Positions 12,501 through 51,036 of a DNA stretch of 64,000 bases are shown here, one piece after another. Position 1 is the first letter of the stretch. Each line of letters starts with the position of its first letter. This DNA comes from Macrostomum lignano (taxonomy: Eukaryota), in contig NIVC01000090.1 in the NCBI GenBank assembly GCA_002269645.1, forward strand, positions 347,560 through 411,559. The letters run 5' to 3'. The position numbers and the translations under genes were made by a program. The notes under the pieces are model-generated. The model did no database searches. It had not been told where the DNA came from and was given only the letters and a program-made list of their open reading frames with translations.

Positions 12501-15500
12501 CGGTTGCTTCAGAGAGACGAGCTACAACGAGAGCAGAGTGCGATTCAAGGAGGAGATCGCCGTGACTGGAAGCGGTTGCTTTCAGAGAGACAAGCTACAA
12601 CGAGAGCAGAGTGCGATTCAAGGAGGAGATCGCCGTGACCGGAAGCGGTTGCTTTCAGAGAAATGAGTCTCAATGAAAGCAGAGTGCGATTCAAGGAGGA
12701 GATCGCCGTGACCGGAAGCGGTTGCTTCAGAGAGACAAGCTACAACGAGAGCAGAGTGCGATTCAAGGAGGAGATCGCCGTGACCGGAAGCGGTTGTTTC
12801 AGAGAAATGAGTCTCAATGAAAGCAGAGTGCAGTTTAAGGAGGAGATCGCCGTGACCGGAAGCGGTTGCTTCAGAGAGACGAGCTACAACGAGAGCAGAG
12901 TGCGATTCAAGGAGGAGATCGCCGTGACTGGAAGCGGTTGCTTCAGAGAGACAAGCTACAACGAGAGCAGAGTGCGATTCAAGGAGGAGATCGCCGTGAC
13001 CGGAAGCGGTTGTTTCAGAGAAATGAGTCTCAATGAAAGCAGAGTGCAGTTTAAGGAGGAGATCGCCGTGACCGGAAGCGGTTGTTTCAGAGAATGAGTC
13101 TCAATGAAAGCAGAGTGCAGTTCAAGGAGGAGATCGCCGTGACCGGAAGCGGTTGCTTTCAGAGAGACGAGCTACAACGAGAGCAGAGTGCGATTCAAGG
13201 AGATCGCCGTGACCGGAAGCGGTTGCTTTCAGAGAAATGAGTCTCAATGAGAAGCAGAGTGCGAGTTCAAGGAGGAGATCGCCGTGACGGAAGCGGTTGC
13301 TTCAGAGAGACGAGCTACAACGAGAGCAGAGTGCGATTCAAGGAGGAGATCGCCGTGACGGAAGCGGTTGCTTCAGAGAGACGAGCTACAACGAGAGCAG
13401 AGTGCGATTCAAGGAGGAGATCGCCGTGACGGAAGCGGTTGCTTCAGAGAGACGAGCTACAACGAGAGCAGAGTGCGATTCAAGGAGGAGATCGCGTGAC
13501 ATGCGGTTGCTTCAGAGAGACGAGCTACAACGAGAGCAGAGTGCAGTTCAAGGAGGAGATCCTGTGACTGGAAGTGGCTTTTGTTTTGAGCTGGATTTTA
13601 TCTCTGCAATGTCGTTGCTGTCGATGAGGTGGTCCTGTCGGCTACCCATGCAGTTTAGAAGTTAAAGTGCAGGATGCAGAAACGGACAATGACGAATATG
13701 TTCAGGTGAAGCATGCTAAAAAGCTTCATAAGCAGAGTAGACCAAGTGTTGAGACGCAAACATTCGTAGAAGTTGCATGTACGGAAGCTTGTAAGGAAAT
13801 ACAACAGCAAAACAGCAGAGTATCCATACAACAAATCCTTGAAGTAACAAGCACGTCCAGTTGCAGAGAAACCGCAACTATCGAAAACAGCATGCAGCAC
13901 GTCGAACTGTTTCTGTCAGCACCACCGGCTGCTGCAAAGAGACACAACTAAGCGAAAGCCGAGTGCACTTTAAAGAAGAGATCGCCGTGACCGGAAGCGG
14001 TTGCTTCAGGGAAATGAGTCTTAATGAAAGCAAAGTGCAGTTCAAGGAGGAGATCGCCGTGACCGGAAGCGGTTGCTTCAGAGAGACGAGCTACAACGAG
14101 AGCAGAGTGCGATTCAAGGAGGAGATCGCCGTGACCGGAAGCGGTTGCTTCAGAGAAATGAGTCTCAATGAAAGCAGAGTGCGATTCAAGGAGGAGATCG
14201 CCGTGACCGGAAGCGGTTGTTTCAGAGAAATGAGTCTCAATGAAAGCAGAGTGCGATTCAAGGAGGAGATCGCCGTGACCGGAAGCGGTTGCTTCAGAGA
14301 GACGAGCTACAACGAGAGCAGAGTGCGATTCAAGGAGGAGATCGCCGTGACTGGAAGCGGTTGCTTCAGAGAGACAAGCTACAACGAGAGCAGAGTGCGA
14401 TTCAAGGAGGAGATCGCCGTGACCGGAAGCGGTTGTTTCAGAGAAATGAGTCTCAATGAAAGCAGAGTGCGATTCAAGGAGGAGATCGCCGTGACCGGAA
14501 GCGGTTGCTTCAGAGAGACAAGCTACAACGAGAGCAGAGTGCGATTCAAGGAGGAGATCGCCGTGACCGGAAGCGGTTGTTTCAGAGAAATGAGTCTCAA
14601 TGAAAGCAGAGTGCAGTTTAAGGAGGAGATCGCCGTGACCGGAAGCGGTTGCTTCAGAGAGACGAGCTACAACGAGAGCAGAGTGCGATTCAAGGAGGAG
14701 ATCGCCGTGACTGGAAGCGGTTGCTTCAGAGAGACAAGCTACAACGAGAGCAGAGTGCGATTCAAGGAGGAGATCGCCGTGACCGGAAGCGGTTGTTTCA
14801 GAGAAATGAGTCTCAATGAAAGCAGAGTGCAGTTCAAGGAGGAGATCGCCGTGACCGGAAGCGGTTGTTTCAGAGAAATGAGTCTCAATGAAAGCAGAGT
14901 GCAGTTCAAGGAGGAGATCGCCGTGACCGGAAGCGGTTGCTTCAGAGAGACGAGCTACAACGAGAGCAGAGTGCGATTCAAGGAGATCGCCGTGACCGGA
15001 AGCGGTTGTTTCAGAGAAATGAGTCTCAATGAAAGCAGAGTGCAGTTCAAGGAGGAGATCGCCGTGACTCGGAAGCGTTTGCTTCAGAGAGACGAGCTAC
15101 AACGAGAGCAGAGTGCGATTCAAGGAGGAGATCGCCGTGACCGGAAGCGGTTGCTTCAGAGAGACGAGCTACAACGAGAGCAGAGTGCGATTCAAGGAGG
15201 AGATCGCCGTGATCGGAAGCGGTTGCTTCAGAGAGACGAGCTACAACGAGAGCAGAGTGCGATTCAAGGAGGATCGCCGTGACCGGATGCGGTTGCTTCA
15301 GAGAGACGAGCTACAACGAGAGCAGAGTGCAGTTCAAGGAGGAGATCCCTGTGACTGGAAGTGGCTTTTGTTTTGAGCTGGATTTTATCTCTGCCAATGT
15401 CGTTGCTGTCGATGAGGTGGTCCTGTCGGCTACCCATGCCAGTTTAGAAGTTAAAGTGCAGGATGCAGAAACGGACAATGACGAATATGTTCAGGTGAAG

Positions 15501-24500: not shown

Positions 24501-27500
24501 AGAGCAGAGTGCAGTTCAAGGAGGAGATCGCCGTGACCGGAAGCGGTTGCTTCAGAGAGACGAGCTACAACGAGAGCAGAGTGCGATTCAAGGAGGAGAT
24601 CGCCGTGACCGGAAGCGGTTGCTTCAGAGAAATGAGTCTCAATGAAGCAGAGTGCAGTTCAAGGAGGAGATCGCCGTGACCGGAAGCGGTTGCTTCAGAG
24701 AGACGAGCTACAACGAGAGCAGAGTGCAGTTCAAGGAGGAGATCGCCGTGACCGGAAGCGGTTGCTTCAGAGAGACGAGCTACAACGAGAGCAGAGTGCG
24801 ATTCAAGGAGGAGATCGCCGTGACCGGAAGCGGTTGCTTCAGAGAGACGAGCTACAACGAGAGCAGAGTGCGATTCAAGGAGGAGATCGCCGTGACCGGA
24901 AGCGGTTGCTTCAGAGAACGAGCTCAACGAAGCAGAGTGCAGTTCAAGGAGGAGATCGCCGTGACCGGAAGCGGTTGCTTCAGAGAGACGAGCTACAACG
25001 AGAGCAGAGTGCAGTTCAAGGAGGAGATCGCCGTGACCGGAAGCGGTTGCTTCAGAGAGACGAGCTACAACGAGAGCAGAGTGCGATTCAAGGAGGAGAT
25101 CGCCGTGACCGGAAGCGGTTGCTTCAGAGAGACGAGCTCAACGAAGCAGAGTGCAGTTCAAGGAGGAGATCGCCGTGACCGGAAGCGGTTGCTTCAGAGA
25201 GACGAGCTACAACGAGAGCAGAGTGCAGTTCAAGGAGGAGATCGCCGTGACCGGAAGCGGTTGCTTCAGAGAGACGAGCTACAACGAGAGCAGAGTGCGA
25301 TTCAAGGAGGAGATCGCCGTGACCGGAAGCGGTTGCTTCAGAGAGACGAGCTACAACGAAGCAGAGTGCAGTTCAAGGAGGAGATCGCCGTGACCGGAAG
25401 CGGTTGCTTCAGAGAGACGAGCTACAACGAGAGCAGAGTGCAGTTCAAGGAGGAGATCGCCGTGACCGGAAGCGGTTGCTTCAGAGAGACGAGCTACAAC
25501 GAGAGCAGAGTGCGATTCAAGGAGGAGATCGCCGTGACCGGAAGCGGTTGCTTCAGAGAGACGAGCTACAACGAGAGCAGAGTGCGATTCAAGGAGGAGA
25601 TCGCCGTGACCGGAAGCGGTTGCTTCAGAGAAATGAGTCTCAATGAAAGCAGAGTGCAGTTCAAGGAGGAGATCGCCGTGACCGGAAGCGGTTGCTTCAG
25701 AGAGACGAGCTACAACGAGAGCAGAGTGCAGTTCAAGGAGGAGATCGCCGTGACCGGAAGCGGTTGCTTCAGAGAGACGAGCTACAACGAGAGCAGAGTG
25801 CGATTCAAGGAGGAGATCGCCGTGACCGGAAGCGGTTGCTTCAGAGAAATGAGTCTCAATGAAGCAGAGTGCAGTTCAAGGAGGAGATCGCCGTGACCGG
25901 AAGCGGTTGCTTCAGAGAGACGAGCTACAACGAGAGCAGAGTGCGATTCAAGGAGGAGATCGCCGTGACCGGAAGCGGTTGCTTCAGAGAGACGAGCTAC
26001 AACGAGAGCAGAGTGCGATTCAAGGAGGAGATCGCCGTGACCGGAAGCGGTTGCTTCAGAGAGACGAGCTACAACGAGAGCAGAGTGCGATTCAAGGAGG
26101 AGATCGCCGTGACCGGAAGCGGTTGCTTCAGAGAAATGAGTCTCAATGAAAGCAGAGTGCAGTTCAAGGAGGAGATCGCCGTGACCGGAAGCGGTTGCTT
26201 CAGAGAAATGAGTCTCAATGAAGCAGAGTGCAGTTCAAGGAGGAGATCGCCGTGACCGGAAGCGGTTGCTTCAGAGAGACGAGCTACAACGAGAGCAGAG
26301 TGCGATTCAAGGAGGAGATCGCCGTGACCGGAAGCGGTTGCTTCAGAGAGACGAGCTACAACGAGAGCAGAGTGCGATTCAAGGAGGAGATCGCCGTGAC
26401 CGGAAGCGGTTGCTTCAGAGAAATGAGTCTCAATGAAAGCAGAGTGCAGTTCAAGGAGGAGATCGCCGTGACCGGAAGCGGTTGCTTCAGAGAGACGAGC
26501 TACAACGAGAGCAGAGTGCGATTCAAGGAGGAGATCGCCGTGACCGGAAGCGGTTGCTTCAGAGAGACGAGCTACAACGAGAGCAGAGTGCGATTCAAGG
26601 AGGAGATCGCCGTGACCGGAAGCGGTTGCTTCAGAGAGACGAGCTACAACGAGAGCAGAGTGCGATTCAAGGAGGAGATCGCCGTGACCGGAAGCGGTTG
26701 CTTCAGAGAAATGAGTCTCAATGAAAGCAGAGTGCAGTTCAAGGAGGAGATCGCCGTGACCGGAAGCGGTTGCTTCAGAGAAATGAGTCTCAATGAAAGC
26801 AGAGTGCAGTTCAAGGAGGAGATCGCCGTGACCGGAAGCGGTTGCTTCAGAGAGACGAGCTACAACGAGAGCAGAGTGCGATTCAAGGAGGAGATCGCCG
26901 TGACCGGAAGCGGTTGCTTCAGAGAGACGAGCTACAACGAGAGCAGAGTGCGATTCAAGGAGGAGATCGCCGTGACCGGAAGCGGTTGCTTCAGAGAAAT
27001 GAGTCTCAATGAAAGCAGAGTGCAGTTCAAGGAGGAGATCGCCGTGACCGGAAGCGGTTGCTTCAGAGAGACGAGCTACAACGAGAGCAGAGTGCGATTC
27101 AAGGAGGAGATCGCCGTGACCGGAAGCGGTTGCTTCAGAGAAATGAGTCTCAACGAAAGCAGAGTGCAGTTCAAGGAGGAGATCGCCGTGACCGGAAGCG
27201 GTTGCTTCAGAGAGACGAGCTACAACGAGAGCAGAGTGCGATTCAAGGAGGAGATCGCCGTGACCGGAAGCGGTTGCTTCAGAGAGACGAGCTACAACGA
27301 GAGCAGAGTGCGATTCAAGGAGGAGATCGCCGTGACCGGAAGCGGTTGCTTCAGAGAAATGAGTCTCAATGAAAGCAGAGTGCAGTTCAAGGAGGAGATC
27401 GCCGTGACCGGAAGCGGTTGCTTCAGAGAGACGAGCTACAACGAGAGCAGAGTGCGATTCAAGGAGGAGATCGCCGTGACCGGAAGCGGTTGCTTCAGAG

Positions 27501-29252
27501 AGACGAGCTACAACGAGAGCAGAGTGCAGTTCAAGGAGGAGATCGCCGTGACCGGAAGCGGTTGCTTCAGAGAGACGAGCTACAACGAGAGCAGAGTGCG
27601 ATTCAAGGAGGAGATCGCCGTGACCGGAAGCGGTTGCTTCAGAGAGACGAGCTACAACGAGAGCAGAGTGCGATTCAAGGAGGAGATCGCCGTGACCGGA
27701 AGCGGTTGCTTCAGAGAAATGAGTCTCAATGAAAGCAGAGTGCAGTTCAAGGAGGAGATCGCCGTGACCGGAAGCGGTTGCTTCAGAGAGACGAGCTACA
27801 ACGAGAGCAGAGTGCGATTCAAGGAGGAGATCGCCGTGACCGGAAGCGGTTGCTTCAGAGAGACGAGCTACAACGAGAGCAGAGTGCGATTCAAGGAGGA
27901 GATCGCCGTGACCGGAAGCGGTTGCTTCAGAGAAATGAGTCTCAATGAAAGCAGAGTGCAGTTCAAGGAGGAGATCGCCGTGACCGGAAGCGGTTGCTTC
28001 AGAGAGACGAGCTACAACGAGAGCAGAGTGCGATTCAAGGAGGAGATCGCCGTGACCGGAAGCGGTTGCTTCAGAGAAATGAGTCTCAATGAAAGCAGAG
28101 TGCAGTTCAAGGAGGAGATCGCCGTGACCGGAAGCGGTTGCTTCAGAGAAATGAGTCTCAATGAAAGCAGAGTGCAGTTCAAGGAGGAGATCGCCGTGAC
28201 CGGAAGCGGTTGCTTCAGAGAAATGAGTCTCAATGAAAGCAGAGTGCAATTCAAGGAGGAGATCGCCGTGACCGGAAGCGGTTGCTTCAGAGAAATGAGT
28301 CTCAATGAAAGCAGAGTGCAGTTCAAGGAGGAGATCGCCGTGACCGGAAGCGGTTGCTTCAGAGAGACCGCGTTTTTACAAAGCCAGGTGCATCACGATC
28401 AAACTGTTGCAATCAGTTCGACTTGCTGCTACAAAGAGTCACACCTGAGCGAGAGTAGAGTTCAGTTTAAAGATGAGGCTCTTGTCACTGGCAGTGGTTT
28501 CTTTAGGGAAAAAGTTTTCGTTGAAAGCGAGATGCGGTCTTGCTTGGATGTGGACAGTAAGACAGTAGTTTCTGATGGTTGCTTCCGTGAACTTGTTTCC
28601 TCGGAGAGTATAGTTCGATTCAAGGAGGAATCTCGTCTAGCTGTTAGCGGCTGTTGTAAGGAGTTTAGTCTGGATCAGTCCTGTGTCAAAGTGTGCTTAG
28701 AGAATTTTGCTGTAGCTAGCGGTTGCTTCCGAGAAAGAAATGATGGCGAGAGTGTTGTGCAATTCAGCACTCCGTGCACTGCTAGTAGTGCTTCCTTCGT
28801 TGATGGATCAGGGCAACCGTCTCGTCCGTTTGTCACAGACTCTGGGCTGAAGGTGTGAAGCGTTTGTTTAGCCGCGGCACTCAAATCAGCGTGTCTAAAG
28901 CTGTGGAAAGTGGCACATTTTTTGAGACGTCTTCGCCTCAAGCTGAGCAGTCTGAGGAGATCAGTCGCGGCGCCTCGTTCACTTTTTCCGGCCTGATGTC
29001 GGCAGATTCGGCGGACTCAACGACTGTCTCTCGGCGTCCAGCGGCCTCAAATTTTAGTCGCCCTTCGCTGGCGTCGATTTCGATTTCGGAGACCGGAGCC
29101 GAGGGACTCGTTGCGCCGGACCTGCTACCGCGTGCTGGGCAGCACGCTGAGGATGCCATGACAGAATCGGAGCTCCAGACTGACACTGAATCGGAGGCCG
29201 ACCTGCTAGCCATCTCGGATCGTTTAAATATTGGAAAAATCTCCGGATTCAG
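598..29252 (+). CDS. Giant exon: acidic N-terminal region, about 320 x 24-aa repeats, six 142-aa spacers, Ser/Glu-rich tail (frame broken by scattered indels)
   Basis: Long clean ORFs 547-3525, 13861-15282, 15279-22670 (2463 aa) and 26228-28858 all encode the same repeat. Many unit variants are synonymous third-position changes in this frame (TGC/TGT, TTC/TTT, ACC/ACT, ACG/ACA). The repeat grades into unique coding sequence at both ends. Donor CAG|GTTTGG at 29253 is phase 2 and matches the next exon. Confidence 0.85.
2569..28367 (+). repeat. 72-bp coding tandem array with two main unit types (TSYN..R and MSLN..Q) and higher-order blocks
   Basis: Unit TTCAAGGAGGAGATCGCCGTGACCGGAAGCGGTTGCTTCAGAGAGACGAGCTACAACGAGAGCAGAGTGCGA. 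Spacer copies begin at about 10187, 13559, 15345, 16563, 18354 and 20580. Confidence 0.98.
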
Positions 29253-29961
29253 GTTTGGATCTGATTGCTGTTTGTTACACTCAAGCGCTTTTTAATAAAC
29301 TTCAAAAACTGTCCATATGTAGAAAAATCTGGTGACGGATCATCCTATGACGAAAGAAAGAACAAACGTCAAATATTATTTACACAAAACATTATGCAAA
29401 TGCATTTCGAGCATTTTGGTCAGCTTCAGGGGCAGCTTGCGGAGATGTTTAGATAGACAGACAGTCCCTCGACCAATTACTGAAGTGATCGTTTATAAGT
29501 TTCAGCGCTCAATAGGGACCAGAGTATCCCCTACATAGGGAAACCAAGCGAGACTTGTACACACGGTCATGTTGTTCATGTTGTAACAGCAACCCTCTGG
29601 ACTAGTGTTATGATTATTGATTCCCGCCGTCTTGAGCCCACTGAACACTTTAGAGGCCGGGACAAAGGCGTGTTGCTGTCGAATACAAATATAACTGGCT
29701 GTCAATCTAAAAATCTCTACAAGCTGCCCTGAAAATAACCAAAATGTTCATCGACTGCTTTATTAAATATTTGATGTTTGTTCATTCCTTCATTCTTATA
29801 AATGGTTATTAAGCGAGCTGGAATAAAGGAGAGAGAAGAGGAAAGAGGAGATGAGAGATGAGAGAAGAGAGCTGAGAAGAGACCCAAAACCAAATTGGTC
29901 TGGGTTAGACTAGCTGTAGCTGTGAATTAAATACTTAATTACTATCTGCAATCTAACAAAG

Positions 29962-34331: not shown

Positions 34332-34840
34332 ATGAGTGCCTGCGGCGCTAAAATGAGTGACTGCGGCGCTAAAATGAGTGACTGCGGCGCTAAAATGAGT
34401 GCCTGCGGCGCTAAAATGAGTGCCTGCGGCGCTAAAATGAGTGCCTGCGGCGCTAAAATGAGTGCCTGCGGCGCTAAAATGAGTGCCTGCGGCGCTAAAA
34501 TGAGTGCCTGTGGCGCTAAAATGAGTGCCTGCGGCGCTAAAATGAGTGCCTGCGGCGCTAAAATGAGTGCCTGCGGCGCTAAAATGAGTGCCTGCGGCGC
34601 TAAAATGAGTGCCTGCGGCGCTAAAATGAGTGCCTGCGGCGCTAAAATGAGTGCCTGCGGTGCTAAAATGAGTGCCTGCGGCGCTAAAATGAGTGACTGC
34701 GGCGCTAAAATGAGTGCCTGCGGCGCTAAAATGAGTGACTGCGGCGCTAAAATGAGTGCCTGCGGCGCTAAAATGAGTGCCTGCGGCGCTAAAATGAGTG
34801 CCTGCGGCGCTAAAATGAGTGCCTGCGGCGCAAAAATGAG
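34332..34840. repeat. 21-bp minisatellite (ATGAGTGCCTGCGGCGCTAAA)
   Basis: About 24 tandem units. The ORFs here (MSACGAK, AAGTHFS) follow from a stop-free 21-bp unit. Confidence 0.95.
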
Positions 34841-35637
34841 CACGCGGGGGGGGGGGGGCAACAGGCACTTCGACAACACTGATTCGGAAATCATTTACAT
34901 GTAGGAATTTACTCATGTACACACGTACCAATCATCACTGATGGTGTTGACCAATTCACGATCTGAGACCGATTATCACTGATTAATCATAAGTTGACCC
35001 ATTCACGAACAGTTATATGAGCATGTGAAACTGCGTGTATGAATGCATTATAAATAGATTAGCTATGCATTGGGGAGCTACGCTCGTACACAATATTCAC
35101 CTGTTCGGAGTCCATGCAGGTAAGATCGATTGAAGCCCTCTTGAGTCAGGCCTGAATGAGCTAGGGGGGATATCGCGATATAGAGAAGTAGCTTGAGCAC
35201 TTCGACACGAGCTCAACCACCCATCTGCGTGCTTACAAGATGTCACTGTCACCTAATTCTATTTCAGACAACAGTGCTTCCCACCTCTGAATGCAACGAA
35301 AGTTTTATTCAATAGAATTATAACATGGAATATTGTTGACAGGCGGAAGAGCCTAAGTAATACGACCGAAATATTGTTTAAGTTTTGTGAAATTTTTCCA
35401 GAACTTTCATGTCTTACTGGCATGCATGGTTGATGGGGTGATAAAACAAATTAGCTACTTGCAACGAGCTAGATATCCACACGTATCTCGCATTCTTCCT
35501 TTGAGAAGATCGTTGAAGCTTGTTGAGGTGTTTTGAAGTTGAGGTGTTTTAGCGTCCTTTGTAAAAGAACTTGTTGCACATGGCATTACCTGCAAAATAG
35601 AAATTATTGTATATATATATATATCAGTCCCCGGTAC

Positions 35638-37750: not shown

Positions 37751-37847
37751 GTAAGAGTAAAATTATACATTTTGTCACCATTCAATGCTGTAGAATTTCC
37801 CAAATAAGTATTATCGACATAAAAAGACCGCAAATCATCATCTTTAG
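37751..37847 (+). other. Probable 5'UTR intron of the peptide-precursor gene
   Basis: GAA|GTAAGA at 37751 and TCTTTAG|G at 37847 give 97 nt, similar to the 92-nt coding intron. The acceptor is 37 nt upstream of the ATG. Confidence 0.45.
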
Positions 37848-37884
37848 GATAGTGAGATCATTATAAATCTTGCCCAAAAGCAAT

Positions 37885-37930
37885 ATGAACTTTGTTTTCG
37901 CCACTTTGTTGCTCATCTCTGCTTTTAGCG
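37885..37930 (+). CDS. Exon 1 of secreted peptide precursor: signal peptide MNFVFATLLLISAFS
   Basis: ATG plus hydrophobic stretch, consensus donor G|GTGAGT at 37931 (phase 1). The 92-nt intron ends in branch-like CTAAC and TCATTTCAG at 38022. Confidence 0.85.
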
Positions 37931-38022
37931 GTGAGTAAAGCAAAAAAGTACATTTGATACTAAATGATTTAGCCACGTTTTTTAATAACACAAATGAGTT
38001 TTACATCACTAACTCATTTCAG

Positions 38023-38549
38023 CACTGGGGCTTGAGTCTGAGGCTCACTATGTCACAGATTCAATGGACGAGTTGGGAATTGTAAGCGAGTCGAAGTGGC
38101 TGTCTGACGGAATCCGTGCCAAGAAGTGGCTGTCTGACGGAATCCGTGCCAAGAAGTGGCTGTCTGACGGAATCCGTGCCAAGAAGTGGCTGTCTGACGG
38201 AATCCGTGCCAAGAAGTGGCTGTCTGACGGAATCCGTGCCAAGAAGTGGCTGTCTGACGGAATCCGTGCCAAGAAGTGGCTGTTGCATGGAATCCGTGCC
38301 AAGAAGTGGCTGTCTGACGGAATCCGTGCCAAGAAGTGGCTGTCGCATGGAATCCGTGCCAAGAAGTGGCTGTCGCATGGAATCCGTTCCAAGAAGTGGC
38401 TGTCGCATGGAATCCGTGCCAAGAAGTGGCTGTCGCATGGAATCCGTGCCAAGAAGTGGCTGTCGCATGGAATCCGTGCCAAGAAGTGGCTGTCGCATGG
38501 AATCCGTGCCAAGAAGTGGCTGTCTGACGGAATCCGTTTCAAAAAGTAA
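38023..38549 (+). CDS. Exon 2 of neuropeptide-like precursor: acidic pro-region plus 15 WLS[D/H]GIR[A/S/F] peptides separated by KK (190-aa precursor)
   Basis: The phase-1 splice puts exon 1 in frame with ALGLESEAHYVTDSMDELGIVSESK followed by (WLSxGIRxKK)15 and TAA right after the last KK. AATAAA at 38705-38710. Confidence 0.85.
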
Positions 38550-39379
38550 CTTCTTTACAACCAGAACATTCTTTATGATGAATTGGAAGAGAAAGTCTAT
38601 TGCCATTTCGAAAATTCCATTAAGTAAGAATCCAGGTATTGATTTAGTTTAAGACTAAGCATAACACGAACTCACGATCTTTTGAAAAGCAGTTTCTGTG
38701 ACGAAATAAACGTGTTACTGACGTCATATACTGCTAAAGTGCTGAAATCTAATGATAATTAACTATTGCTTTATAATCAAATTAAATAAGAGCCAACAAA
38801 ATGCTATGCATTTTTTTGATTAATCTATAACAAAATGGCAAACGTAAGAAAAAGGCGCATATATATTTTATTTTGATCATATAATGTTCAAATTTTGAGT
38901 TTTGTCGGAAAAATTATATAAAAACAACAACCCAGACTAAAAGACAGTTGAAAAGCAACAGAATGAATTCCTAATAAAGAGAGGAAACATCGATAAAAAT
39001 CCCAAAAACTATCTTTTAACAATTAATTAGCATGACAATGAACACATACAAGGAAATATACTTTGCGAAACTAATAGCCATTGGCACTGAACCTTCAATT
39101 CTAACGTCAAATAAAAGTTTTATAGCATTTCAACAAAAACTTTATAATAAGATTAATACTTGAGCTGTAGAAGTCTGAATTGTTTTTTGAATCCGAAAAC
39201 AGAAAAAATCTTTAAGTTAATAAACATGAACAAAGAAATAACTACCAAAGCTTTACAGATAAAGAAGCATACAGATTGCTATGCGTATAGTGATTACACA
39301 GCTTCAAGGATCAAGGACTACTTGTAGTAAGAAGACGCAGCAAAGGAGGCAAAGTATGTATTTATCGATCCGTTCATCT

Positions 39380-40144: not shown

Positions 40145-41098
40145 TCAAGCAGCAGACTTCACTGACTGCTGACCCAATGCTGTCGTGGGCAGCTGGGTAG
40201 CCGCCTTAGCAACGATGTCCTCTCGTAGTTTAACCCAAGAGTAAGCGAACACACCTAAGCAGACTAGTAGTATAGCCATGACCTGTTCTAACGATATTGG
40301 ATCGTTAAATATCAGGTAGCCCAAAGTGAGAGCCGAACAGAATTTCAGATGTCCGGCCATATTATAGGTTAGAGCTGACGTATTGCCAATGATCCAATAG
40401 ATGGACAAATTAACAAGGAAGGCGATGCCAGCCGACAGGCCAACCATGCCGACAGCCTGACTGCTCAGAGTCAAACTGACACTCGATGGTGGCTCAAAAT
40501 AAGCAATCGGTGGCAGTAGAAGCAGAGCAGACAAAGGCGCCTGATAGAACAGCAGCTGAGCAGAGTCGCACTGCAAATTAGACTGGAAAGTGCCAACCCA
40601 GATTTGGTAAAGCGACGTCACAAGCACGCCAGCCGCGGCAAATGCCATACCTATTGGGCTAAATTTTAAATCGTAGTGCGAATTCAAAGCAACACCAACA
40701 ACAACCGGTACAAAAGTGAGACGCAGACGCCAGGACGATGGTTTGCCATAAGCTACGGCATTAATAGTCATAATGCAGGGCGTAGTTAAAGTCTTTAACA
40801 CCTGATAGGTGCCCACAGTGTTGAATTGCAGACTAAGATTTGTCAAGGCGACAAAGCCGCAGAAGGTGAGGGACAGAGGCAGCATACGAAGCACCGGGAG
40901 ATTTTTCGGGCGGAAAATGCCAAACAGTCTGCAGATTAGCAGGCCAAGAAAGGTGACAACAAAGTGTATCATTGTTAGAGTCAAATTGGGAAAGCCGTAA
41001 TGCGTATAGACGTATTTGTTAACGCCAACAATGGCTACGGATACCAGGATGTTGAGGCACAGAATCGTGCCTATAAAAAAGTCTGAACGATGAGCCAT
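40145..41098 (-). CDS. SLC35E3: Solute carrier family 35 member E3-like nucleotide-sugar/TPT-family transporter, intronless CDS
   Basis: 317-aa multi-TM ORF with family motifs: SVAIVGVNKYVY, FPNLTLTMIHFVVT, FCGFVALTNLSLQFNTVGTYQVLKTLTTP, QLLFYQAPLSA, VNLSIYWIIGNTSALTYNMAGHLK. Confidence 0.88.
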   Translation of the reverse strand: MAHRSDFFIGTILCLNILVSVAIVGVNKYVYTHYGFPNLTLTMIHFVVTFLGLLICRLFGIFRPKNLPVLRMLPLSLTFCGFVALTNLSLQFNTVGTYQVLKTLTTPCIMTINAVAYGKPSSWRLRLTFVPVVVGVALNSHYDLKFSPIGMAFAAAGVLVTSLYQIWVGTFQSNLQCDSAQLLFYQAPLSALLLLPPIAYFEPPSSVSLTLSSQAVGMVGLSAGIAFLVNLSIYWIIGNTSALTYNMAGHLKFCSALTLGYLIFNDPISLEQVMAILLVCLGVFAYSWVKLREDIVAKAATQLPTTALGQQSVKSAA

Positions 41099-42161: not shown

Positions 42162-42578
42162 TCAACTAGAAGCAGGCGAAGCAGCATCGGTCACGTGCAG
42201 ATCAGTCTGGCGTTGAATTAACTCCACCAAATCTGCCAGACTGAAATTGCCTGTCTTAACTACCAGCGACTGGCCGTCGAAATACGAGACGAGAAGCGTC
42301 GGCTCTGACCGATCGCCCCGAATGACAACCTGACAGGGACACTCCAGATTGCTGGCTCGCCATCGCGGCGTGTGCAATACGCTGCACAGTTTTCTTAAAG
42401 AAGCCGACTGCGGATTAAACGGGTCGTATTCGAATCGAAAGCTGGAAATTGGTTTTAAATTGAATTTTCGCAGCTTGTCCCGAGATATCTGTTGGTCATT
42501 CTCCGATAGGCGATTACGAAAATACTTGATAAAAGGCACCGTCTTGTGCGGTCGCAGGGAGCCCCAACGAGTTGCCAT
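42162..42578 (-). CDS. MRPL53: Mitochondrial ribosomal protein L53, intronless CDS
   Basis: 138 aa. LKPISSFRFEYDPFNPQSASLRK...RASNLECPCQVVIRGDRSEPTLLVSYFDGQSLVVK matches the mL53 pattern (LRPVKQVRVQFCPF...STNLNC...RHDGSEP...FGDG). The basic N-terminal extension fits a mitochondrial presequence. Confidence 0.85.
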   Translation of the reverse strand: MATRWGSLRPHKTVPFIKYFRNRLSENDQQISRDKLRKFNLKPISSFRFEYDPFNPQSASLRKLCSVLHTPRWRASNLECPCQVVIRGDRSEPTLLVSYFDGQSLVVKTGNFSLADLVELIQRQTDLHVTDAASPASS

Positions 42579-45347: not shown

Positions 45348-45928
45348 TCAGGTTAAACTGAAACAACCTCGCCATATAGCTAACGGGCTACGTTTGAATC
45401 CGGTCTCCTGGGCGCCAAGGCACAGCACCGAGGCGCCAAACTCGCCGCCGCTGCCATCAACAGCAGCGGGTTCAGCGTCGAGTTCATCATCGTCAGCGCC
45501 GATGGAAGCCGCGGAAGCGCCGCCAACCGTAGAACCGCAGCTCGACGAAACGGACAGAGACGGATTAGCGAACGCCCACGAGACGGGGTCAGCTGCCGAA
45601 GTCGCTGCCGCATCAACTGGTCCTCCGCCCGGCTGCCTAATTGTTGCCAATTCAATTTCCGCTCCGGAACATTGATGACGATTATAATGAGAAGATTCGA
45701 ACTCGCGACCTTCGTTGTTAGACCGACTATTAACTTGTTGAATAGATGGCTTAGTATAGTGCGGAAATAATGACAGCAGACTGTGATGCACCGTGCCTCT
45801 TGGCCGTTGCTGGCGCTGCTGCTGTACAGATCGTACCGGAGTCCAAGTCTCCGAGGTCAGTCGCAATGACCACAGCTGGTCTGTGGTCCGTTGGTCTCGA
45901 GTTTCGCCGCCAAATATTAGCATGTGAC
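45348..45928 (-). CDS. Kelch-repeat protein, terminal exon (GHMLIFGGE...SPLAIWRGCFSLT*)
   Basis: Acceptor TTTTATACCCTGCCAG|GT (AG at 45930-45929), phase 1 completes ...IVQG-HMLIFGG kelch blade. TGA at 45350-45348. Confidence 0.85.
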
Positions 45929-46030
45929 CTGGCAGGGTATAAAAGATTTTGTTTACAACCTGGCGCAACAAAGCATGTCGGGCATGTACACTCTGTGTCT
46001 TGGGGGTTGGTTGCACATTATTATTATATT

Positions 46031-46140
46031 GCTGTTCAGTCCAAGGACTGGGGGGGGGGGGTCGCCACACACACCCTCAATTACCCCAGCTAATGCTGGC
46101 ACCCATTTTACAGCTGGGCGAACTGAAGCACTGCATCTAT
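46031..46140 (-). mobile_element. CORE-type SINE body, truncated copy
   Basis: Closely similar to 51256-51360, including CACCCATTTTACAGCTGGG..AACTGAAGC, which resembles the reverse MIR/CORE domain. Confidence 0.7.
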
Positions 46141-46194
46141 AAATAAATAGAAAACGCTGTTCTTTATAACAGAGCATTCCTCGATATCACCGGA

Positions 46195-46262
46195 GGGGTT
46201 GTAGCCTAGTGGTCAGAGCGTCGGAGTCACGACTTGAAGGTCGGTGGTTCGATTCTCGACCG
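46195..46262 (+). mobile_element. tRNA-derived SINE head (Pol III A and B boxes)
   Basis: TAGCCTAGTGG (A box) and GGTTCGATTCT (B box). No proper anticodon arm or acceptor stem. Confidence 0.65.
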
Positions 46263-46589
46263 AAAGTTGTAAATTATATGTCTGCCACTTTAAAGCAAAT
46301 CCAAACAATTCAATCTATTCTATATCATATTATAACGTATAATTAAATATATTCGGTAAAATATATAGTATTAAATTTAAAAGAAGTCCCATCAGGCTAG
46401 GCACAAAGTGCATTAGAATCATCATGCAGAATCAATAATATAGAAAAGTGCAACAGTGAAGTGTATATTCTTGACTCTCCCAGTTTTTTATTTAATAATT
46501 ATATTACCTATCCGAATCAGAATACAAATCAGATCAGTTTTTCTTATGCAAATTGAATTTCTGCTATTAGCAGAATTTGAAATGATGTG

Positions 46590-48316
46590 AGAGTGCCACT
46601 ATCACACATGATGTGAACTGCACCAGAGTGCCACTATCACACATGATGTGAACTGCACCAGAGTGCCACTATCACACATGATGTGAACTGCACCAGAGTG
46701 CCACTATCACACATGATGTGAACTGCACCAGAGTGCCACTATCACACATGATGTGAACTGCACCAGAGTGCCACTATCACACATGATGTGAACTGCAGCA
46801 GAGTGCCACTATCACACATGATGTGAACTGCAGCAGAGTGCCACTATCACACATGATGTGAACTGCACCAGAGTGCCACTATCACACATGATGTGAACTG
46901 CACCAGAGTGCCACTATCACACATGATGTGAACTGCACCAGAGTGCCACTATCACACATGATGTGAACTGCACCAGAGTGCCACTATCACAAATGATGTG
47001 AACTGCAGCAGAGTGCCACTATCACACATGATGTGAACTGCAGCAGAGTGCCACTATCACACATGATGTGAACTGCACCAGAGTGCCACTATCACAAATG
47101 ATGTGAACTGCAGCAGAGTGCCACTATCACACATGATGTGAACTGCAGCAGAGTGCCACTATCACACATGATGTGAACTGCACCAGAGTGCCACTATCAC
47201 AAATGATGTGAACTGCAGCAGAGTGCCACTATCACACATGATGTGAACTGCAGCAGAGTGCCACTATCACACATGATGTGAACTGCACCAGAGTGCCACT
47301 ATCACACATGATGTGAACTGCACCAGAGTGCCACTATCACAAATGATGTGAACTGCAGCAGAGTGCCACTATCACACATGATGTGAACTGCAGCAGAGTG
47401 CCACTATCACACATGATGTGAACTGCACCAGAGTGCCACTATCACACATGATGTGAACTGCACCAGAGTGCCACTATCACAAATGATGTGAACTGCACCA
47501 GAGTGCCACTATCACACATGATGTGAACTGCACCAGAGTGCCACTATCACACATGATGTGAACTGCACCAGAGTGCCACTATCACACATGATGTGAACTG
47601 CACCAGAGTGCCACTATCACACATGATGTGAACTGCACTAGAGTGCCACTATCACAAATGATGTGAACTGCACCAGAGTGCCACTATCACACATGATGTG
47701 AACTGCACCAGAGTGCCACTATCACACATGATGTGAACTGCAGCAGAGTGCCACTATCACACATGATGTGAACTGCAGCAGAGTGCCACTATCACACATG
47801 ATGTGAACTGCACCAGAGTGCCACTATCACACATGATGTGAACTGCACCAGAGTGCCACTATCACACATGATGTGAACTGCACCAGAGTGCCACTATCAC
47901 ACATGATGTGAACTGCACCAGAGTGCCACTATCACAAATGATGTGAACTGCAGCAGAGTGCCACTATCACACATGATGTGAACTGCAGCAGAGTGCCACT
48001 ATCACACATGATGTGAACTGCACCAGAGTGCCACTATCACAAATGATGTGAACTGCAGCAGAGTGCCACTATCACACATGATGTGAACTGCACCAGAGTG
48101 CCACTATCACACATGATGTGAACTGCACCAGAGTGCCACTATCACAAATGATGTGAACTGCAGCAGAGTGCCACTATCACACATGATGTGAACTGCAGCA
48201 GAGTGCCACTATCACACATGATGTGAACTGCACCAGAGTGCCACTATCACACATGATGTGAACTGCACCAGAGTGCCACTATCACAAATGATGTGAACTG
48301 CAGCAGAGTGCCACTA
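46590..48316. repeat. 35-bp satellite, about 49 copies (AGAGTGCCACTATCACACATGATGTGAACTGCACC), in kelch intron
   Basis: Exact 35-bp period with two variant sites (CACC/CAGC, ACAC/ACAA). Confidence 0.98.
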
Positions 48317-48989
48317 TTCAACCCTTAAAATTATTTATATGACCACAAACAGCGTTTAAAAGCAGCTATTTTTTGTTAAATCCGCTGACTATAAAACAAA
48401 GGCAGACAGAATCATGGCTGCGAAAAGAAGCTTATAAAATTTCAATTGAAATTTACCTAAATAGGCATCCCTTGATCTCACAGTGGCATCAGTGTCAAAA
48501 GCGAAAAAAACTAATTTCCTCAGTAGAAAAGACTCAAATCCTCGTTAATTTTAATAACTATAATTAAAGCTTTGAAATTGCTGTGCCAATAACAGATTAA
48601 CAACAAATGAATTCCCTGTTTTTAGAATATTTATTCGCTTTAAATCTTTTCTAAATTAAGATTCTTCTTTGTTGAGAGTTAGAGACAAAGCTTAAGAAGT
48701 GAATTTTTCGATTAAGGATCCAATCAAGGATTCAGGACACACACATAGACACACACATAGGTGACCATTTGACTTGAAAAGTGAAAATGGTGTTTCTTTC
48801 ATATCTCTATCAGCCAGGCTATCAAAAAGCATATGCTATGCATTGTATTATTTAAAAAAATTGAATAATCATACTTGGATTCCATTATTATTAATCTGTT
48901 TGTTACTTTCTAATAAAAAATGCTTCTTTCTATTATCCACCTCTTGTACTCGTAAATTGACACTAACTGAATGACTATCTAAGGAAGGC

Positions 48990-49290
48990 CGGCTGTGCGT
49001 AGCCCAGTGGTCTAGCTAGGCGCTCCGATGTGCCAGCGGCCCAGGCTCGATTCCAAGTGCAGTCACATTAATTTGGGGCTAAATTGGAATCTCGGCTTGG
49101 CTCTGCTCGTGCAATTAACGCTCAGCTTGAGGGCCAACCCCCAAATGCACAGTGAAGTGTACATGCCTAACGATAAATAAAGTTAGGGCCGCTGTACACT
49201 CCTGTGTGAGTGTGTGCCTGTGCGTATGACTGCGTACGTATCCCCGCGCTTGTGTGCCTGCTCAGGGGAGTCGGCGGAATGGGGGCAGCA
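48990..49290 (+). mobile_element. tRNA-derived SINE-like element in kelch intron
   Basis: A-box-like TAGCCCAGTGG and B-box-like GGCTCGATTCC followed by about 220 nt of unrelated body. The 3' boundary is uncertain. Confidence 0.5.
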
Positions 49291-49333
49291 ATGCCTCTCG
49301 CTAGCTATGAACGCTCTAAACAGCAGCACTCAC

Positions 49334-49891
49334 CCTGCACAATACAGGCCGAATGAAATGCAACAGCTTGAGGCCCTCCATTAGCCGTTAACTCGCTAAC
49401 GTGACCGCTACTTGACTGATTTCCATCCGTCGGGATTCGAATCCGGGACCACTGGCCAATACGGAAGCTCCAGCGCCACAGGTCGGGCTGGCAGAGGTAC
49501 AGGCCGCCATAGCCGCCGAACACGTACATGCCGCAGTCGTGGGCGCAGGCCGTGTGTCCGAACCGAGCACTCGGACCGAAATAAGCGTCCGACGAACTAT
49601 TCGAATCGCTATGGATTGAAGTTAAACCAGTAGAACCGTGCGAACCGTCCGACCCGGTGTCGGACAGCTGGCCAGCCGGACAGCTCGGCCAGACCAGATG
49701 CCATTCCTCCGATTTCAGATCGAATCGCCACAGTTCTTGAGTAGGCTTGTCAGCGTAACCGCCAAAGATGTACAGGTAGCGGCTGTGAAGCACTGCGCTG
49801 TGATTGCGGCGGCTGCTTGGCTGGGGCTGATGCTGCTGCTGATGATGCTGCTGCAGGTGCTGCTGCACTGGCGACAGGCGGCCAGATGGAA
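49334..49891 (-). CDS. Kelch-repeat protein, internal exon
   Basis: Blades PSSRRNHSAVLHSRYLYIFGGY..ELWRFD and PSARFGHTACAHDCGMYVFGGY..DLWRWS. Acceptor CTGACCGCAG and donor G|GTGAGT, phase 1-1, 558 nt. Confidence 0.88.
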
Positions 49892-49974
49892 CTGCGGTCA
49901 GTTGTTAAGGGGATTTTTTAGCTGGGAATTGTTGTAAACACTGGTTACAGTTAGATTAATCATGTAATCTGAAT

Positions 49975-50540
49975 TGAGATTCTTAAGGTGAGATGGACTG
50001 AGATTCTCTAGGTCAGATGGATTGAGATTCTCAAGGTGAGATGGAGTGAGATTCTCAAGGTGAGATGGACTGAGATTCTCCAGGTGAGATGGAATAAGAA
50101 TCTCAAGGTGAGATGGACTGAGATTCTCCAGGTGAGATGGAATGAGAATCTAAAGGTGAGATGGACTGAGATTCTCGAGGTGAGATTGGCTGAGAATGTA
50201 AAAGTGAGATGGACTGAGATTCTCAAGGTGAGATGGACTGAGATTCTCAAAGTGAGATTGTTTGAGAATCTAAAGGTGAGATGGACTGAGATTCTCGAGG
50301 TGAGATTGGCTGAGAATCTAAAAGTGAGATGGACTGAGATTCTCAAAGTGAGATGGACTGAAATTCTCGAGGTGAGATTGGCTGAGAATCTCAAAGTGAG
50401 ATGGACTGAGATTCTCAAAGTGAGATGGACTGAGATTCTCAAGGAGAGTTGGACTAAGATTCCCTAGATATGATAGACTGGAAATCTCAAGGTGAGATGG
50501 ACTGAGATTCTCTAGGTGAGATGGACTGAGATTCCCAAGT
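49975..50540. repeat. 24-bp minisatellite (TCAAGGTGAGATGGACTGAGATTC) filling a kelch intron
   Basis: Occupies about 565 of the 697 nt of intron 49892-50588. Confidence 0.95.
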
Positions 50541-50588
50541 TAAGACTGGCTTACAATCTTTAGATGGAACAGGCATACAAACACTCAC

Positions 50589-51036
50589 CAGCAGCCGCAG
50601 GCGCTGTCAGTTGATCAACCACCGCTACCCCACCAGGCTGCCACTGCCTGCTAAGCCGCAGTCTCGGCGACACAATCCACAAAGGACAGTCCGGATAGCC
50701 TCCGTGGGTGCCGCCAAACAGGTACAGCCTGCCATTTGCGCCAGTCATTGTGTGACCGTCTAAATGAGGTGGCGCGCAACCAGTCAGGCTCAGCCGCTCC
50801 CAGCCTGCGTCCGAGCGCCAACGCCAAGCGTCTTTCAATGGTTGCCGACCTCGCCGACCGCCGTGTACATACAGCCAGCCATTTAACAGGGCGCAGGCCT
50901 GTTTCCAACGGCCCAATGGTTGAGGCTGATCGGCACTATCCAGAAGACTCTGCTCTTCATCAGAATCATCTGGAGCAAAGGTGCCGTTAAATGGTGTTGG
51001 CCCGGTCAGTTGAGACCATTGTACAGTGTTGTCGGT
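50589..51036 (-). CDS. Kelch-repeat protein, 5'-most securely identified exon
   Basis: Blades GRWKQACALLNGWLYVHGGR..PLKDAWRW and PPHLDGHTMTGANGRLYLFGG. Acceptor TTTTAACACAG (phase 0), donor G|GTGAGT (phase 1). No in-frame ATG before the first blade, so an upstream exon is needed. LZTR1/KLHDC-type kelch, no BTB domain seen. Confidence 0.82.

What the first reader, a model, noticed from the sequence alone, without database searches (positions are those of the whole stretch)
37885..38549. Hidden two-exon precursor for 15 KK-flanked WLS[D/H]GIRA peptides: candidate new neuropeptide or secreted-peptide family
Seen in sequence: ATG 37885 encodes MNFVFATLLLISAFS. A 92-nt GTGAGT...CTAAC...TTTCAG intron (37931-38022) joins it in phase 1 to ALGLESEAHYVTDSMDELGIVSESK, then 15 x 30-bp units, then TAA. 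Units are WLSDGIRA x7, WLSHGIRA x5, WLLHGIRA, WLSHGIRS and WLSDGIRF, each followed by KK; the precursor is 190 aa. Established: signal peptide, acidic pro-segment and repeated peptides between dibasic sites is the standard prohormone layout processed by PC1/3 or PC2 and carboxypeptidase E. No Gly precedes the KK, so the products would be non-amidated. Inference: I do not recognise WLSxGIRA from any known peptide family. The ORF track misses the signal exon, so the array looks like an ordinary minisatellite. Alternatives to a neuronal role are a glandular, seminal or antimicrobial product, since the uncleaved decamer WLSHGIRAKK is cationic and amphipathic.
Basis: partly seen in the sequence, partly recalled or inferred. 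Interest (0 to 1): 0.9.

Follow-up and report, generated by a model that had tools for sequence, protein, structure and literature searches.

The report
Flatworm gene for repeated secreted peptides
This is a real, already-annotated but unstudied gene of the flatworm Macrostomum lignano that encodes a signal peptide followed by 15 near-identical ten-residue units ending in Lys-Lys; it looks like a precursor for many copies of one small secreted peptide, though where it is expressed and what the peptide does are unknown.

Summary

The window is Macrostomum lignano assembly Mlig_3_7, contig NIVC01000090.1. The gene is not hidden. The public, RNA-seq-guided annotation already calls a 190-aa product on exactly this span.

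Two colinear duplicate loci carry the same gene with 17 and 29 units.

An exhaustive HMMER scan found true relatives only in M. lignano. These are paralogues with WLSDGFRNKK and W[IL]GDGFRSKK arrays. The decamers are 50-80% identical to this array's, while the pro-regions are only 23-40% identical. The shared motif is W-[LI]-x-[DH]-G-[IF]-R-x-K-K.

A signal-like spliced start is not expected by chance: 0 of 1870 control anchors under strict criteria, and none of the other arrays in this minisatellite-dense window has one.

Best reading: a lineage-restricted multi-copy secreted-peptide precursor. A neuronal role, KK cleavage and the final products are all untested. All-KK sites, no amidation and 15/17/29 copy variation fit a gland or other secreted product equally well.

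I found no published description of the family. Verdict: a new member of a known kind, of moderate interest.

The parts
37846..37868 (+). Possible 5' end signals. A pyrimidine-tract AG (ATCATCATCTTTAG, ending near 37846) could be a spliced-leader acceptor. TATAAA lies at 37862-37867, only 23 nt before the ATG. Both assignments are uncertain.
   Evidence: Pattern scan. There is no ATG between 37847 and 37884, and the start context AGCAATATGA has A at -3 (sequence). This is inference only.
37885..37930 (+). Exon 1 coding part: MNFVFATLLLISAFS plus the first base of codon 16. It forms the signal-peptide-like N-terminus. The hydrophobic run has no charged residue. Candidate cleavage sites by the -3/-1 rule are AFS|A and ALG|L.
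   Evidence: hydrophobicity score 2.6. It is identical in the two duplicate loci. It lies within the called 190-aa gene.
37931..38022 (+). 92-nt phase-1 intron, GTGAGT…CTAAC (38009)…TTTCAG.
   Evidence: The called gene span of 665 nt yields 190 aa only if 92 nt are removed. The paralogous copy L003 has a 725-nt span for 210 aa, which needs the same 92-nt intron. There is one substitution in 92 nt between copies.
38023..38096 (+). Start of exon 2: the end of the signal region plus the acidic pro-segment (A)LGLESEAHYVTDSMDELGIVSESK. Residues 19-40 have pI 4.1 and net charge -5. The segment ends in a single Lys before the first unit.
   Evidence: The paralogues carry KK at this junction, and H24, V26 and K40 are invariant.
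38097..38546 (+). 15 tandem 30-bp units encoding W-L-[S/L]-[D/H]-G-I-R-[A/S/F]-K-K.
   Evidence: W, L, G, I, R, K and K are invariant in all 61 units of the three loci.
38547..38549 (+). TAA stop codon.
38705..38710 (+). AATAAA, the likely polyadenylation signal, giving a 3' UTR of about 160-180 nt. An alternative ATTAAA lies at 38781.
   Evidence: Pattern scan. This is inference only.

Best explanation
This is a genuine two-exon protein-coding gene of Macrostomum lignano. It is one member of a small family, so far seen only in this species, of multi-copy secreted-peptide precursors.

The N-terminal hydrophobic segment would direct the 190-aa product into the secretory pathway. An acidic pro-segment would balance a very basic array (net charge +32). 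The 15 decamers would be separated at their Lys-Lys pairs by a subtilisin-type proprotein convertase. M. lignano has a neuronally expressed PC2 homologue. A carboxypeptidase would then trim the KK. The result would be about 15 non-amidated octapeptides, WLSDGIRA and WLSHGIRA plus three single variants, released as extracellular signalling or effector peptides.

Shown: the gene structure, its presence in a transcript-based annotation, the paralogous family, and the conserved motif with KK spacing.

Inferred: secretion, cleavage at KK, trimming, and any biological role. The array evolves by unequal exchange, with 15, 17 and 29 units in three near-identical duplicates.
For: - The gene model is exact and spans 37885-38549. 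The public gene calls on contig NIVC01000090.1 of GCA_002269645.1 have a 190-residue product on exactly that span and strand.
- That annotation was built from RNA-seq with StringTie, TACO, TBONE and TransDecoder (PMC5730564). A called intron therefore implies spliced reads.
- A second copy is called as 210 aa with the same intron.
- A signal-like spliced start is absent from 1870 control anchors under a strict donor, and from the other 19 open frames tested in the window's arrays.
- The full HMMER scan of 1.84 billion representatives found true relatives only in M. lignano. P0006 has W[IL]GDGFRSKK x11. P0007, P0029 and P0156 have WLSDGFRNKK. UniProt names P0029 'Secreted protein'.
- Between subfamilies the units are 5-8 of 10 identical. 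W1, G5, R7, K9 and K10 are fixed, and position 4 is D (D or H in this gene). The pro-regions are only 5-8 of about 20-22 identical. Conserved peptides with drifting spacers are the usual signature of bioactive-peptide precursors.
- In both paralogue types KK also precedes the first unit.
- The 190-aa copy meets the formal criteria used for planarian prohormones: a signal sequence, basic sites flanking the peptides, and length under 200 aa (PMC2953531).
- M. lignano has a PC2 homologue expressed in the nervous system (PMC4490696).
Against: - I saw no RNA-seq reads, expression site, peptide mass spectra or orthologue outside M. lignano.
- The exact proteins are absent from the searchable protein collection, so there is no independent transcript-derived copy.
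- All 15 sites are KK. From my own knowledge of proprotein convertase specificity (Veenstra 2000; NeuroPred), KK is the least used dibasic site. No unit ends in Gly for amidation.
- Unit number differs (15, 17, 29) among duplicates that are 95-98% identical in their flanks. This behaviour is more typical of minisatellite-encoded gland or structural proteins. The 210- and 330-aa copies exceed the 200-aa rule of thumb.
- The 29-unit copy was not called as a gene.
- Substitutions among units (3 synonymous, 4 non-synonymous) and codon usage do not single out this frame.
- The three copies are too recent for their identity to show constraint.
- TATAAA sits too close to the ATG to serve it.
Confidence: 0.55

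Rival explanations
1. It is a secreted but unprocessed repetitive protein. The ~20-kDa, pI-11 polycation would be made by a gland cell (prostate or seminal, rhabdite or mucus, cement or pharyngeal gland). It would act intact, for example by binding polyanions. On this reading the KK pairs are charge-bearing residues, not cleavage sites.
For: - The mature protein has net charge +32 and pI 11.06.
- Unit number varies (15, 17, 29) with higher-order blocks, as in minisatellite-encoded secretory proteins.
- KK is a poor convertase site (my own knowledge).
- AlphaFold2 gives one continuous helix across the array, mean pLDDT 80.6.
- M. lignano gland products include very basic, repeat-rich orphan proteins such as Mlig-ap1 (PMC6410801).
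Against: - The helical hydrophobic moment over six units is only 0.10, so a 10-residue period gives no persistent amphipathic face. pTM is 0.29 and the model used a single sequence.
- The strict retention of a dibasic pair after every unit and before the first unit in the paralogues, together with an acidic pro-segment, is the precursor layout.
- The sequence has no Tyr or Cys, no Pfam domain hit above the curated cut-off and no convincing match to a solved structure, so nothing points to cross-linking or a folded domain.
Confidence: 0.25
2. It is a processed polyprotein whose products are host-defence or other externally acting peptides (antimicrobial, pheromonal or seminal), not neuropeptides. 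This would be analogous to the apidaecin or Baramicin multipeptide precursors, or to yeast alpha-factor. It overlaps with the best explanation in mechanism and differs in cell type and target.
For: - The layout has an acidic propiece followed by basic repeats.
- Copy number varies between duplicates. From my own knowledge, this is known for apidaecin genes.
- The untrimmed decamers carry +2 to +3 charge and include Trp and Arg.
- The family is lineage-restricted and diverging fast.
Against: - After normal carboxypeptidase trimming the octapeptides are neutral (WLSDGIRA) or +1 (WLSHGIRA), and only 8 residues long. That is atypical for membrane-active peptides.
- There are no induction or expression data.
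Confidence: 0.15
3. It is not a functional gene. It would be one of the many minisatellites of this region that happens to be transcribed and to carry an open frame, with the gene model being an annotation by-product.
For: - The window holds at least 16 tandem arrays, several with triplet periods and open frames.
- 4 of 6 frames of this unit are open, including an ATG-started 181-aa antisense ORF.
- Codon usage and within-array substitutions do not favour any frame.
- The 29-unit duplicate was not called as a gene.
Against: - A strong-donor intron joins a signal-like exon in frame. That occurred in 0 of 1870 controls, and at none of the other arrays.
- Diverged paralogues keep W, G, R and KK in the same register, and keep a basic site at the pro-region junction, while the pro-region drifts.
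- The model sits in a transcript-based annotation at two loci.
Confidence: 0.05

Closest known systems
Clade-specific multi-copy peptide (MCP) neuropeptide precursors. Examples are the planarian spp/npp prohormones (Collins et al. 2010, PMC2953531) and the xenacoelomorph LWDY, AWDF and MxGFG peptides (Thiel et al. 2018, PMC6188537).
   Same: A signal sequence, a non-conserved spacer, and many near-identical short 'paracopies', each flanked by basic residues. The family is lineage-restricted, has paralogous subfamilies, and non-amidated members exist.
   Different: Every site is KK rather than KR or RR. The array holds 15-29 copies of an almost invariant unit, with copy-number differences between near-identical duplicates. 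There is no evidence yet of neuronal expression, PC2 dependence or a mass-spectrometric product.
Insect multipeptide immune precursors: the honeybee apidaecin genes and Drosophila Baramicin (my own knowledge, not tested here).
   Same: A polyprotein of tandem peptide units separated by convertase sites, with a variable repeat number and rapid lineage-specific evolution.
   Different: Those units are longer (about 18-28 aa) and Pro-rich or structured. Their spacers use RR or RXRR plus dipeptidyl trimming. Here the trimmed products are 8 aa long and nearly uncharged.
Yeast alpha-factor precursor MFα1 (my own knowledge).
   Same: A signal, then a pro-region, then tandem copies of one short peptide, each bounded by a dibasic site and trimmed by a carboxypeptidase. 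The product is a secreted signal.
   Different: That precursor uses KR-EAEA spacers cut by Kex2 and Ste13 and has only 4 copies. It is an unrelated sequence from an unrelated lineage.
M. lignano paralogues A0A1I8IJ38, A0A1I8FF56, A0A1I8FXQ2 and A0A1I8FTA2 (UniProt models from the older ML2 assembly).
   Same: They have the same 10-residue period, the same W-[LI]-x-D-G-[IF]-R-x-K-K motif and a related pro-region (…LES..H.V…). One is auto-named 'Secreted protein'.
   Different: They have Phe instead of Ile at position 6, and Asn or Ser at position 8. KK rather than a single K precedes the first unit. Two of the models are chimeric read-throughs with frame slips and misleading 'ANK_REP_REGION' names.

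Membership tests
Flatworm neuropeptide/peptide-hormone prohormones (criteria of Collins et al. 2010, PMC2953531) | N-terminal signal sequence | tested here: inconclusive
   The N-terminus has a 13-residue uncharged hydrophobic run, with small residues at -3/-1 for the cuts AFS|A or ALG|L. No SignalP-type predictor was available, so the heuristic is met but no formal prediction was made.
Flatworm neuropeptide/peptide-hormone prohormones (criteria of Collins et al. 2010, PMC2953531) | Basic cleavage sites flanking the predicted peptides | tested here: met
   KK follows all 15 units and a single K precedes the first. In the paralogues KK precedes the first unit too.
Flatworm neuropeptide/peptide-hormone prohormones (criteria of Collins et al. 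2010, PMC2953531) | Precursor shorter than 200 aa | tested here: inconclusive
   This copy is 190 aa, but the two duplicate loci encode 210 and 330 aa.
Flatworm neuropeptide/peptide-hormone prohormones (criteria of Collins et al. 2010, PMC2953531) | cDNA verification and mass-spectrometric detection of the peptides, with PC2 dependence | not testable with these tools
   Only indirect evidence exists: the model is part of an RNA-seq-guided annotation. No reads or spectra were accessible.
Flatworm neuropeptide/peptide-hormone prohormones (criteria of Collins et al. 2010, PMC2953531) | Expression in neurons or neurosecretory cells | not testable with these tools
   No expression atlas, ISH or single-cell data for this gene were found.
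Any named protein or peptide family (Pfam, PDB, literature) | Significant sequence match to a described family | tested here: not met
   - Pfam: only a sub-threshold chance hit, PF10391 at 23.9 bits against a cut-off of 29.8.
- PDB: only spurious repeat matches.
- 1.84 billion protein representatives: only unnamed M. lignano paralogues carry the motif.
- Peptide strings and accessions are absent from 8.3 million full texts.
Cationic antimicrobial peptide polyproteins | Mature peptides that are cationic and amphipathic | tested here: inconclusive
   The untrimmed decamers carry +1.8 to +2.8 charge, with µH 0.43-0.45. The trimmed octapeptides carry -0.2 to +0.8 charge, with µH 0.62-0.66. The result depends on unknown processing.
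Non-coding minisatellite | No feature beyond a stop-free repeat unit, and no conservation of a reading frame in diverged copies | tested here: not met
   The gene has an in-frame signal-like exon and a strong-donor intron, seen in 0 of 1870 controls. Its motif and KK register are kept in diverged paralogues.

The most novel reading that the evidence does not exclude
W-[LI]-x-[DH]-G-[IF]-R-x (the 'WLSxGIRA' type) is a previously undescribed, Macrostomum-restricted family of non-amidated signalling peptides, either neuropeptide or pheromone. They would be cut exclusively at Lys-Lys from precursors whose copy number changes rapidly (15 to 29) between the subgenome copies of a neopolyploid. This would give a tractable case of the birth and dosage evolution of a peptide signal in an animal with RNAi and transgenesis.
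Probability: 0.25. Interest if true: 0.55.

Novelty: new member of a known kind. Interest (0 to 1): 0.4.

Why it matters
If the peptides are real, this adds an orphan peptide family to a flatworm model that has RNAi, transgenesis and a known PC2. The ligand, its cells and its receptor could then be found directly.

The three near-identical loci with 15, 17 and 29 units would show how peptide dosage evolves by unequal exchange after genome duplication.

It is also a practical reminder. In minisatellite-rich genomes, arrays that repeat-masking would discard can be coding. The older UniProt models of the paralogues are chimeric and misnamed.

It does not open a long-standing question. Lineage-specific multi-copy peptide candidates are common, and the gene model itself is already public.

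Tried and rejected
- Word-indexed protein search with the full 190 aa found no hits.
- The same kind of search with a profile of the three subfamilies found only two UniProt M. lignano fragments.
- Exact look-ups of the 190-, 210-, 330-, 161- and 181-aa products showed none is in the collection. No Logan or transcript-derived copy could be used as expression evidence.
- The spliced protein could not be looked up by contig. The paralogues P0007 and P0029 have no gene position on record. I therefore could not test whether the paralogues share the signal exon and the intron phase.
- Codon-usage likelihood, trained on 1005 codons from neighbouring genes, does not discriminate between frames.
- Synonymous versus non-synonymous counts among the six unit variants give 3:4 in three different frames, which is uninformative.
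- Identity among the three loci is uninformative on selection because they are very recent duplicates. The upstream 400 nt match at 398-400 positions and the intron at 91-92 of 92.
- Rfam found nothing in the window.
- Literature: there is no M. lignano neuropeptidome or cell atlas in the held library. McVeigh et al. 2009 is not held. The supplements of Weber 2018 and Wudarski 2017 contain no sequences, primers or IDs for this gene. I abandoned a planned primer-tile search because those supplements hold no primer lists.
- I rejected an identity with the adhesive proteins Mlig-ap1 and Mlig-ap2, whose described repeats and domains differ. I also rejected the eggshell/tanning-protein idea, because the unit has no Tyr.
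- AlphaFold2 from a single sequence gives one long helix with pTM 0.29. I treated this as non-diagnostic.

Full report
**What is in the sequence**

- An ATG at 37885 sits in a good start context (AGCAATATGA). It opens a 46-nt exon encoding MNFVFATLLLISAFS plus one base.
- A 92-nt intron follows at 37931-38022. It starts GTGAGT, contains CTAAC at 38009 and ends TTTCAG.
- Exon 2 runs from 38023 to 38549. It continues in phase 1 with ALGLESEAHYVTDSMDELGIVSESK.
- Fifteen exact 30-bp units follow at 38097-38546, then TAA.
- The product is 190 aa. The units are WLSDGIRAKK x7, WLSHGIRAKK x5, and one each of WLLHGIRAKK, WLSHGIRSKK and WLSDGIRFKK.
- Tandem Repeats Finder gives period 30, 14.8 copies, 96% matches and no indels.

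**Why an open frame alone proves nothing here**

The window is extraordinarily rich in tandem arrays. A 72-bp unit is repeated about 360 times across 2569-28368. At least fifteen more arrays follow, with periods 20, 41, 21, 20, 30, 8, 33, 21, 21, 35, 24, 18, 23 and others.

Four of the six frames of the 30-bp unit are stop-free. One is an ATG-started 181-aa antisense ORF. The test therefore had to rest on what lies around the array.

I scanned for an ATG exon with an uncharged hydrophobic run, joined in frame through a GT[AG]AGT…YAG intron.

- 0 of 1870 control anchors in the non-repeat parts of the window (both strands) gave such a model.
- 14 of 1870 did with a loose GT[AG] donor.
- Among 20 open frames of the 8 arrays tested, only the WLSxGIRA frame has such a start.

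**Where the window comes from, and the existing annotation**

The intronless 317-aa sugar-phosphate-transporter (TPT) gene lies 1.6 kb downstream at 40145-41098 on the minus strand. It is found on contig NIVC01000090.1 of assembly GCA_002269645.1. Its near-identical relatives are named as Macrostomum lignano proteins. The organism is therefore the free-living flatworm M. lignano, assembly Mlig_3_7.

The gene calls stored for that contig include a 190-residue product at L001 12550-13214. That maps to window 37885-38549 on the plus strand.

That annotation was derived from RNA-seq by StringTie, TACO, the TBONE boundary pipeline and TransDecoder (PMC5730564). A called intron thus implies spliced reads, although I could not see the reads myself. 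The gene is therefore not hidden. It is annotated but unnamed, with no Pfam family on record.

**Duplicate loci**

The TPT paralogue led to two more contigs. Both are colinear with the window over at least 16 kb at about 90-98% identity. All the minisatellites are included. This fits the known redundancy of this neopolyploid assembly.

Both contigs carry the same gene. Exon 1 and the pro-segment are identical, and the intron differs at one position. The arrays have 17 units (210 aa, called as a gene) and 29 units (330 aa, not called). A sixth unit type, WLSDGIRSKK, appears, and the long array shows higher-order blocks.

W, L, G, I, R, K and K are invariant in all 61 units. Because these copies are so recent, their identity says nothing about selection. 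They do show that the array changes length quickly by unequal exchange.

**Relatives**

A word-indexed search found nothing. The exhaustive HMMER scan of 1.84 billion representatives gave 242 hits. Of the 150 listed, all but three are unrelated proteins with 10-residue repeats.

The true relatives are all M. lignano models from the older ML2 assembly:

- A0A1I8IJ38 has W[IL]GDGFRSKK x11, preceded by …LESSSHEVSGYDDDERLTKK.
- A0A1I8FF56 has WLSDGFRNKK.
- A0A1I8FXQ2 has WLSDGFRNKK and is auto-named 'Secreted protein'.
- A0A1I8FTA2 has WLSDGFRNKK.

Two of these models are chimeric read-throughs with frame slips inside the arrays. That is probably an assembly or annotation artefact.

Between subfamilies the decamers are 5-8 of 10 identical. 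W1, G5, R7, K9 and K10 are fixed, and position 4 is D (D or H in this gene). The pro-regions share only 5-8 of about 20-22 residues. In both paralogue types KK also precedes the first unit. Conserved peptides and cleavage register with drifting spacers is the classic pattern of a bioactive-peptide precursor. This is the strongest argument that the frame is under selection.

I could not obtain the paralogues' genomic DNA to test for a shared signal exon.

**Properties of the product**

- The N-terminus has a 13-residue uncharged hydrophobic core, and small residues that allow cleavage after S15 or G18. No formal signal-peptide predictor was available.
- The pro-segment is acidic, with pI 4.1 and charge -5.
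- The mature protein has pI 11.06 and charge +32.
- If the protein is cut at KK and trimmed, the products are WLSDGIRA (neutral) and WLSHGIRA (+1). The untrimmed decamers carry +2 to +3.
- AlphaFold2 from a single sequence draws one 155-residue helix (pLDDT 80.6, pTM 0.29). A 10-residue period gives a helical hydrophobic moment of only 0.10 over six units. A long amphipathic helix is therefore not supported.
- Pfam and PDB give only sub-threshold or spurious repeat matches.

**How it most likely works**

The product would enter the secretory pathway. A subtilisin-type convertase would cleave it after each KK. M. lignano has a PC2 homologue that is expressed in the nervous system and is essential for development (PMC4490696). 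A carboxypeptidase would remove the KK. The result would be about 15 copies of a non-amidated octapeptide per precursor.

The 190-aa copy satisfies the operational criteria used for planarian prohormones: a signal, flanking basic sites and length under 200 aa (PMC2953531). Clade- or species-specific multi-copy peptides, some non-amidated, are a well-known class (PMC6188537).

Every step after translation is inference. Four points argue against a classical neuropeptide:

- All sites are KK, which from my own knowledge is the least favoured dibasic site.
- No unit has a Gly for amidation.
- Copy number is labile.
- The duplicates exceed 200 aa.

These features fit a gland product equally well, whether processed or not. 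I give 0.55 to a processed multi-copy secreted-peptide precursor, of which about 0.25 is for a neuronal signalling role. I give 0.25 to an unprocessed secreted polycationic protein, 0.15 to a specifically defensive or externally acting peptide role, and 0.05 to a non-functional transcribed minisatellite.

**Novelty and score**

No paper in the held library contains any of the peptide strings, the UniProt accessions or the neighbouring gene IDs. No named family matches. The family appears undescribed. However, the gene model is public and the kind of object is familiar.

The verdict is a new member of a known kind, with interest 0.4. The candidate is clean, testable and paralogue-supported, in a tractable model.

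Noticed in passing
window 2569-28368 (+), with flanking ORFs 547-3525 and 26228-29295: A 26-kb array of about 360 copies of a 72-bp unit. It is open on the + strand for up to 2463 aa, with the 24-aa unit FKEEIAVTGSGCFRETSYNESRVR. It shows strong GC and AT skew. Pfam LRR_5 (BspA-type leucine-rich repeat) scores 2.6e-20, and DUF7808 also hits. A gene of more than 983 residues is called at the colinear place in the duplicate L002. By the published descriptions it is not the adhesive proteins Mlig-ap1 or Mlig-ap2.
   Followed up: partly
window 30775-52409: A field of at least 12 minisatellites with periods 20, 41, 21, 20, 30, 8, 33, 21, 21, 35, 24 and 18. All are conserved and colinear in two duplicate contigs at 90-98% identity. 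Several have triplet periods and long open frames, such as (MSACGAK)n at 34332-34904. None has a signal-like start and none is called as a gene.
   Followed up: partly
window 38061-38606 (-): An ATG-started 181-aa ORF antisense to the array, (LLGTDS[V/M]RQP)n. Its N-terminus is partly hydrophobic but contains charged residues. It is most likely a by-product of a stop-free unit, and it is not in the public gene calls.
   Followed up: partly
L002 (NIVC01000091.1) about 11995-12864 and L003 (NIVC01003752.1) 11995-12719, both on the minus strand of the locus: The same gene has 29 and 17 units instead of 15. The 29-unit array contains a repeated five-unit block (WLLHGIRAKK, WLSDGIRSKK, WLSHGIRAKK, WLSHGIRSKK, WLSHGIRSKK). 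This is a footprint of unequal exchange. The 29-unit copy is intact but was not annotated.
   Followed up: yes
Proteins P0006 (A0A1I8IJ38) and P0007 (A0A1I8FF56): These UniProt/ML2 models of the paralogues are 710-1007-aa chimeras. They read through neighbouring minisatellites and slip between frames inside the decamer array, for example in the stretches SGSPMASGTRSG and VALRRLQEQ. They are auto-named 'ANK_REP_REGION domain-containing protein', which is misleading.
   Followed up: partly
window 37846-37868: TATAAA lies only 23 nt upstream of the ATG, too close to place a start site before it. A pyrimidine-tract AG at about 37846 could be a spliced-leader trans-splice acceptor, which is common in this species.
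   Followed up: no
window 40145-41098 (-), 42162-42578 (-), 45348-50916 (-): The neighbours are ordinary genes: an intronless TPT/SLC35-type transporter, mitochondrial ribosomal protein mL53, and a Kelch-repeat protein whose introns are filled with minisatellites. The peptide gene is convergent with the transporter gene.
   Followed up: partly
window 38059: A second in-frame acceptor (first exon-2 base at 38059) would give MNFVFATLLLISAFS|DSMDELG…, a product shorter by 12 aa. There is no evidence that it is used.
   Followed up: no
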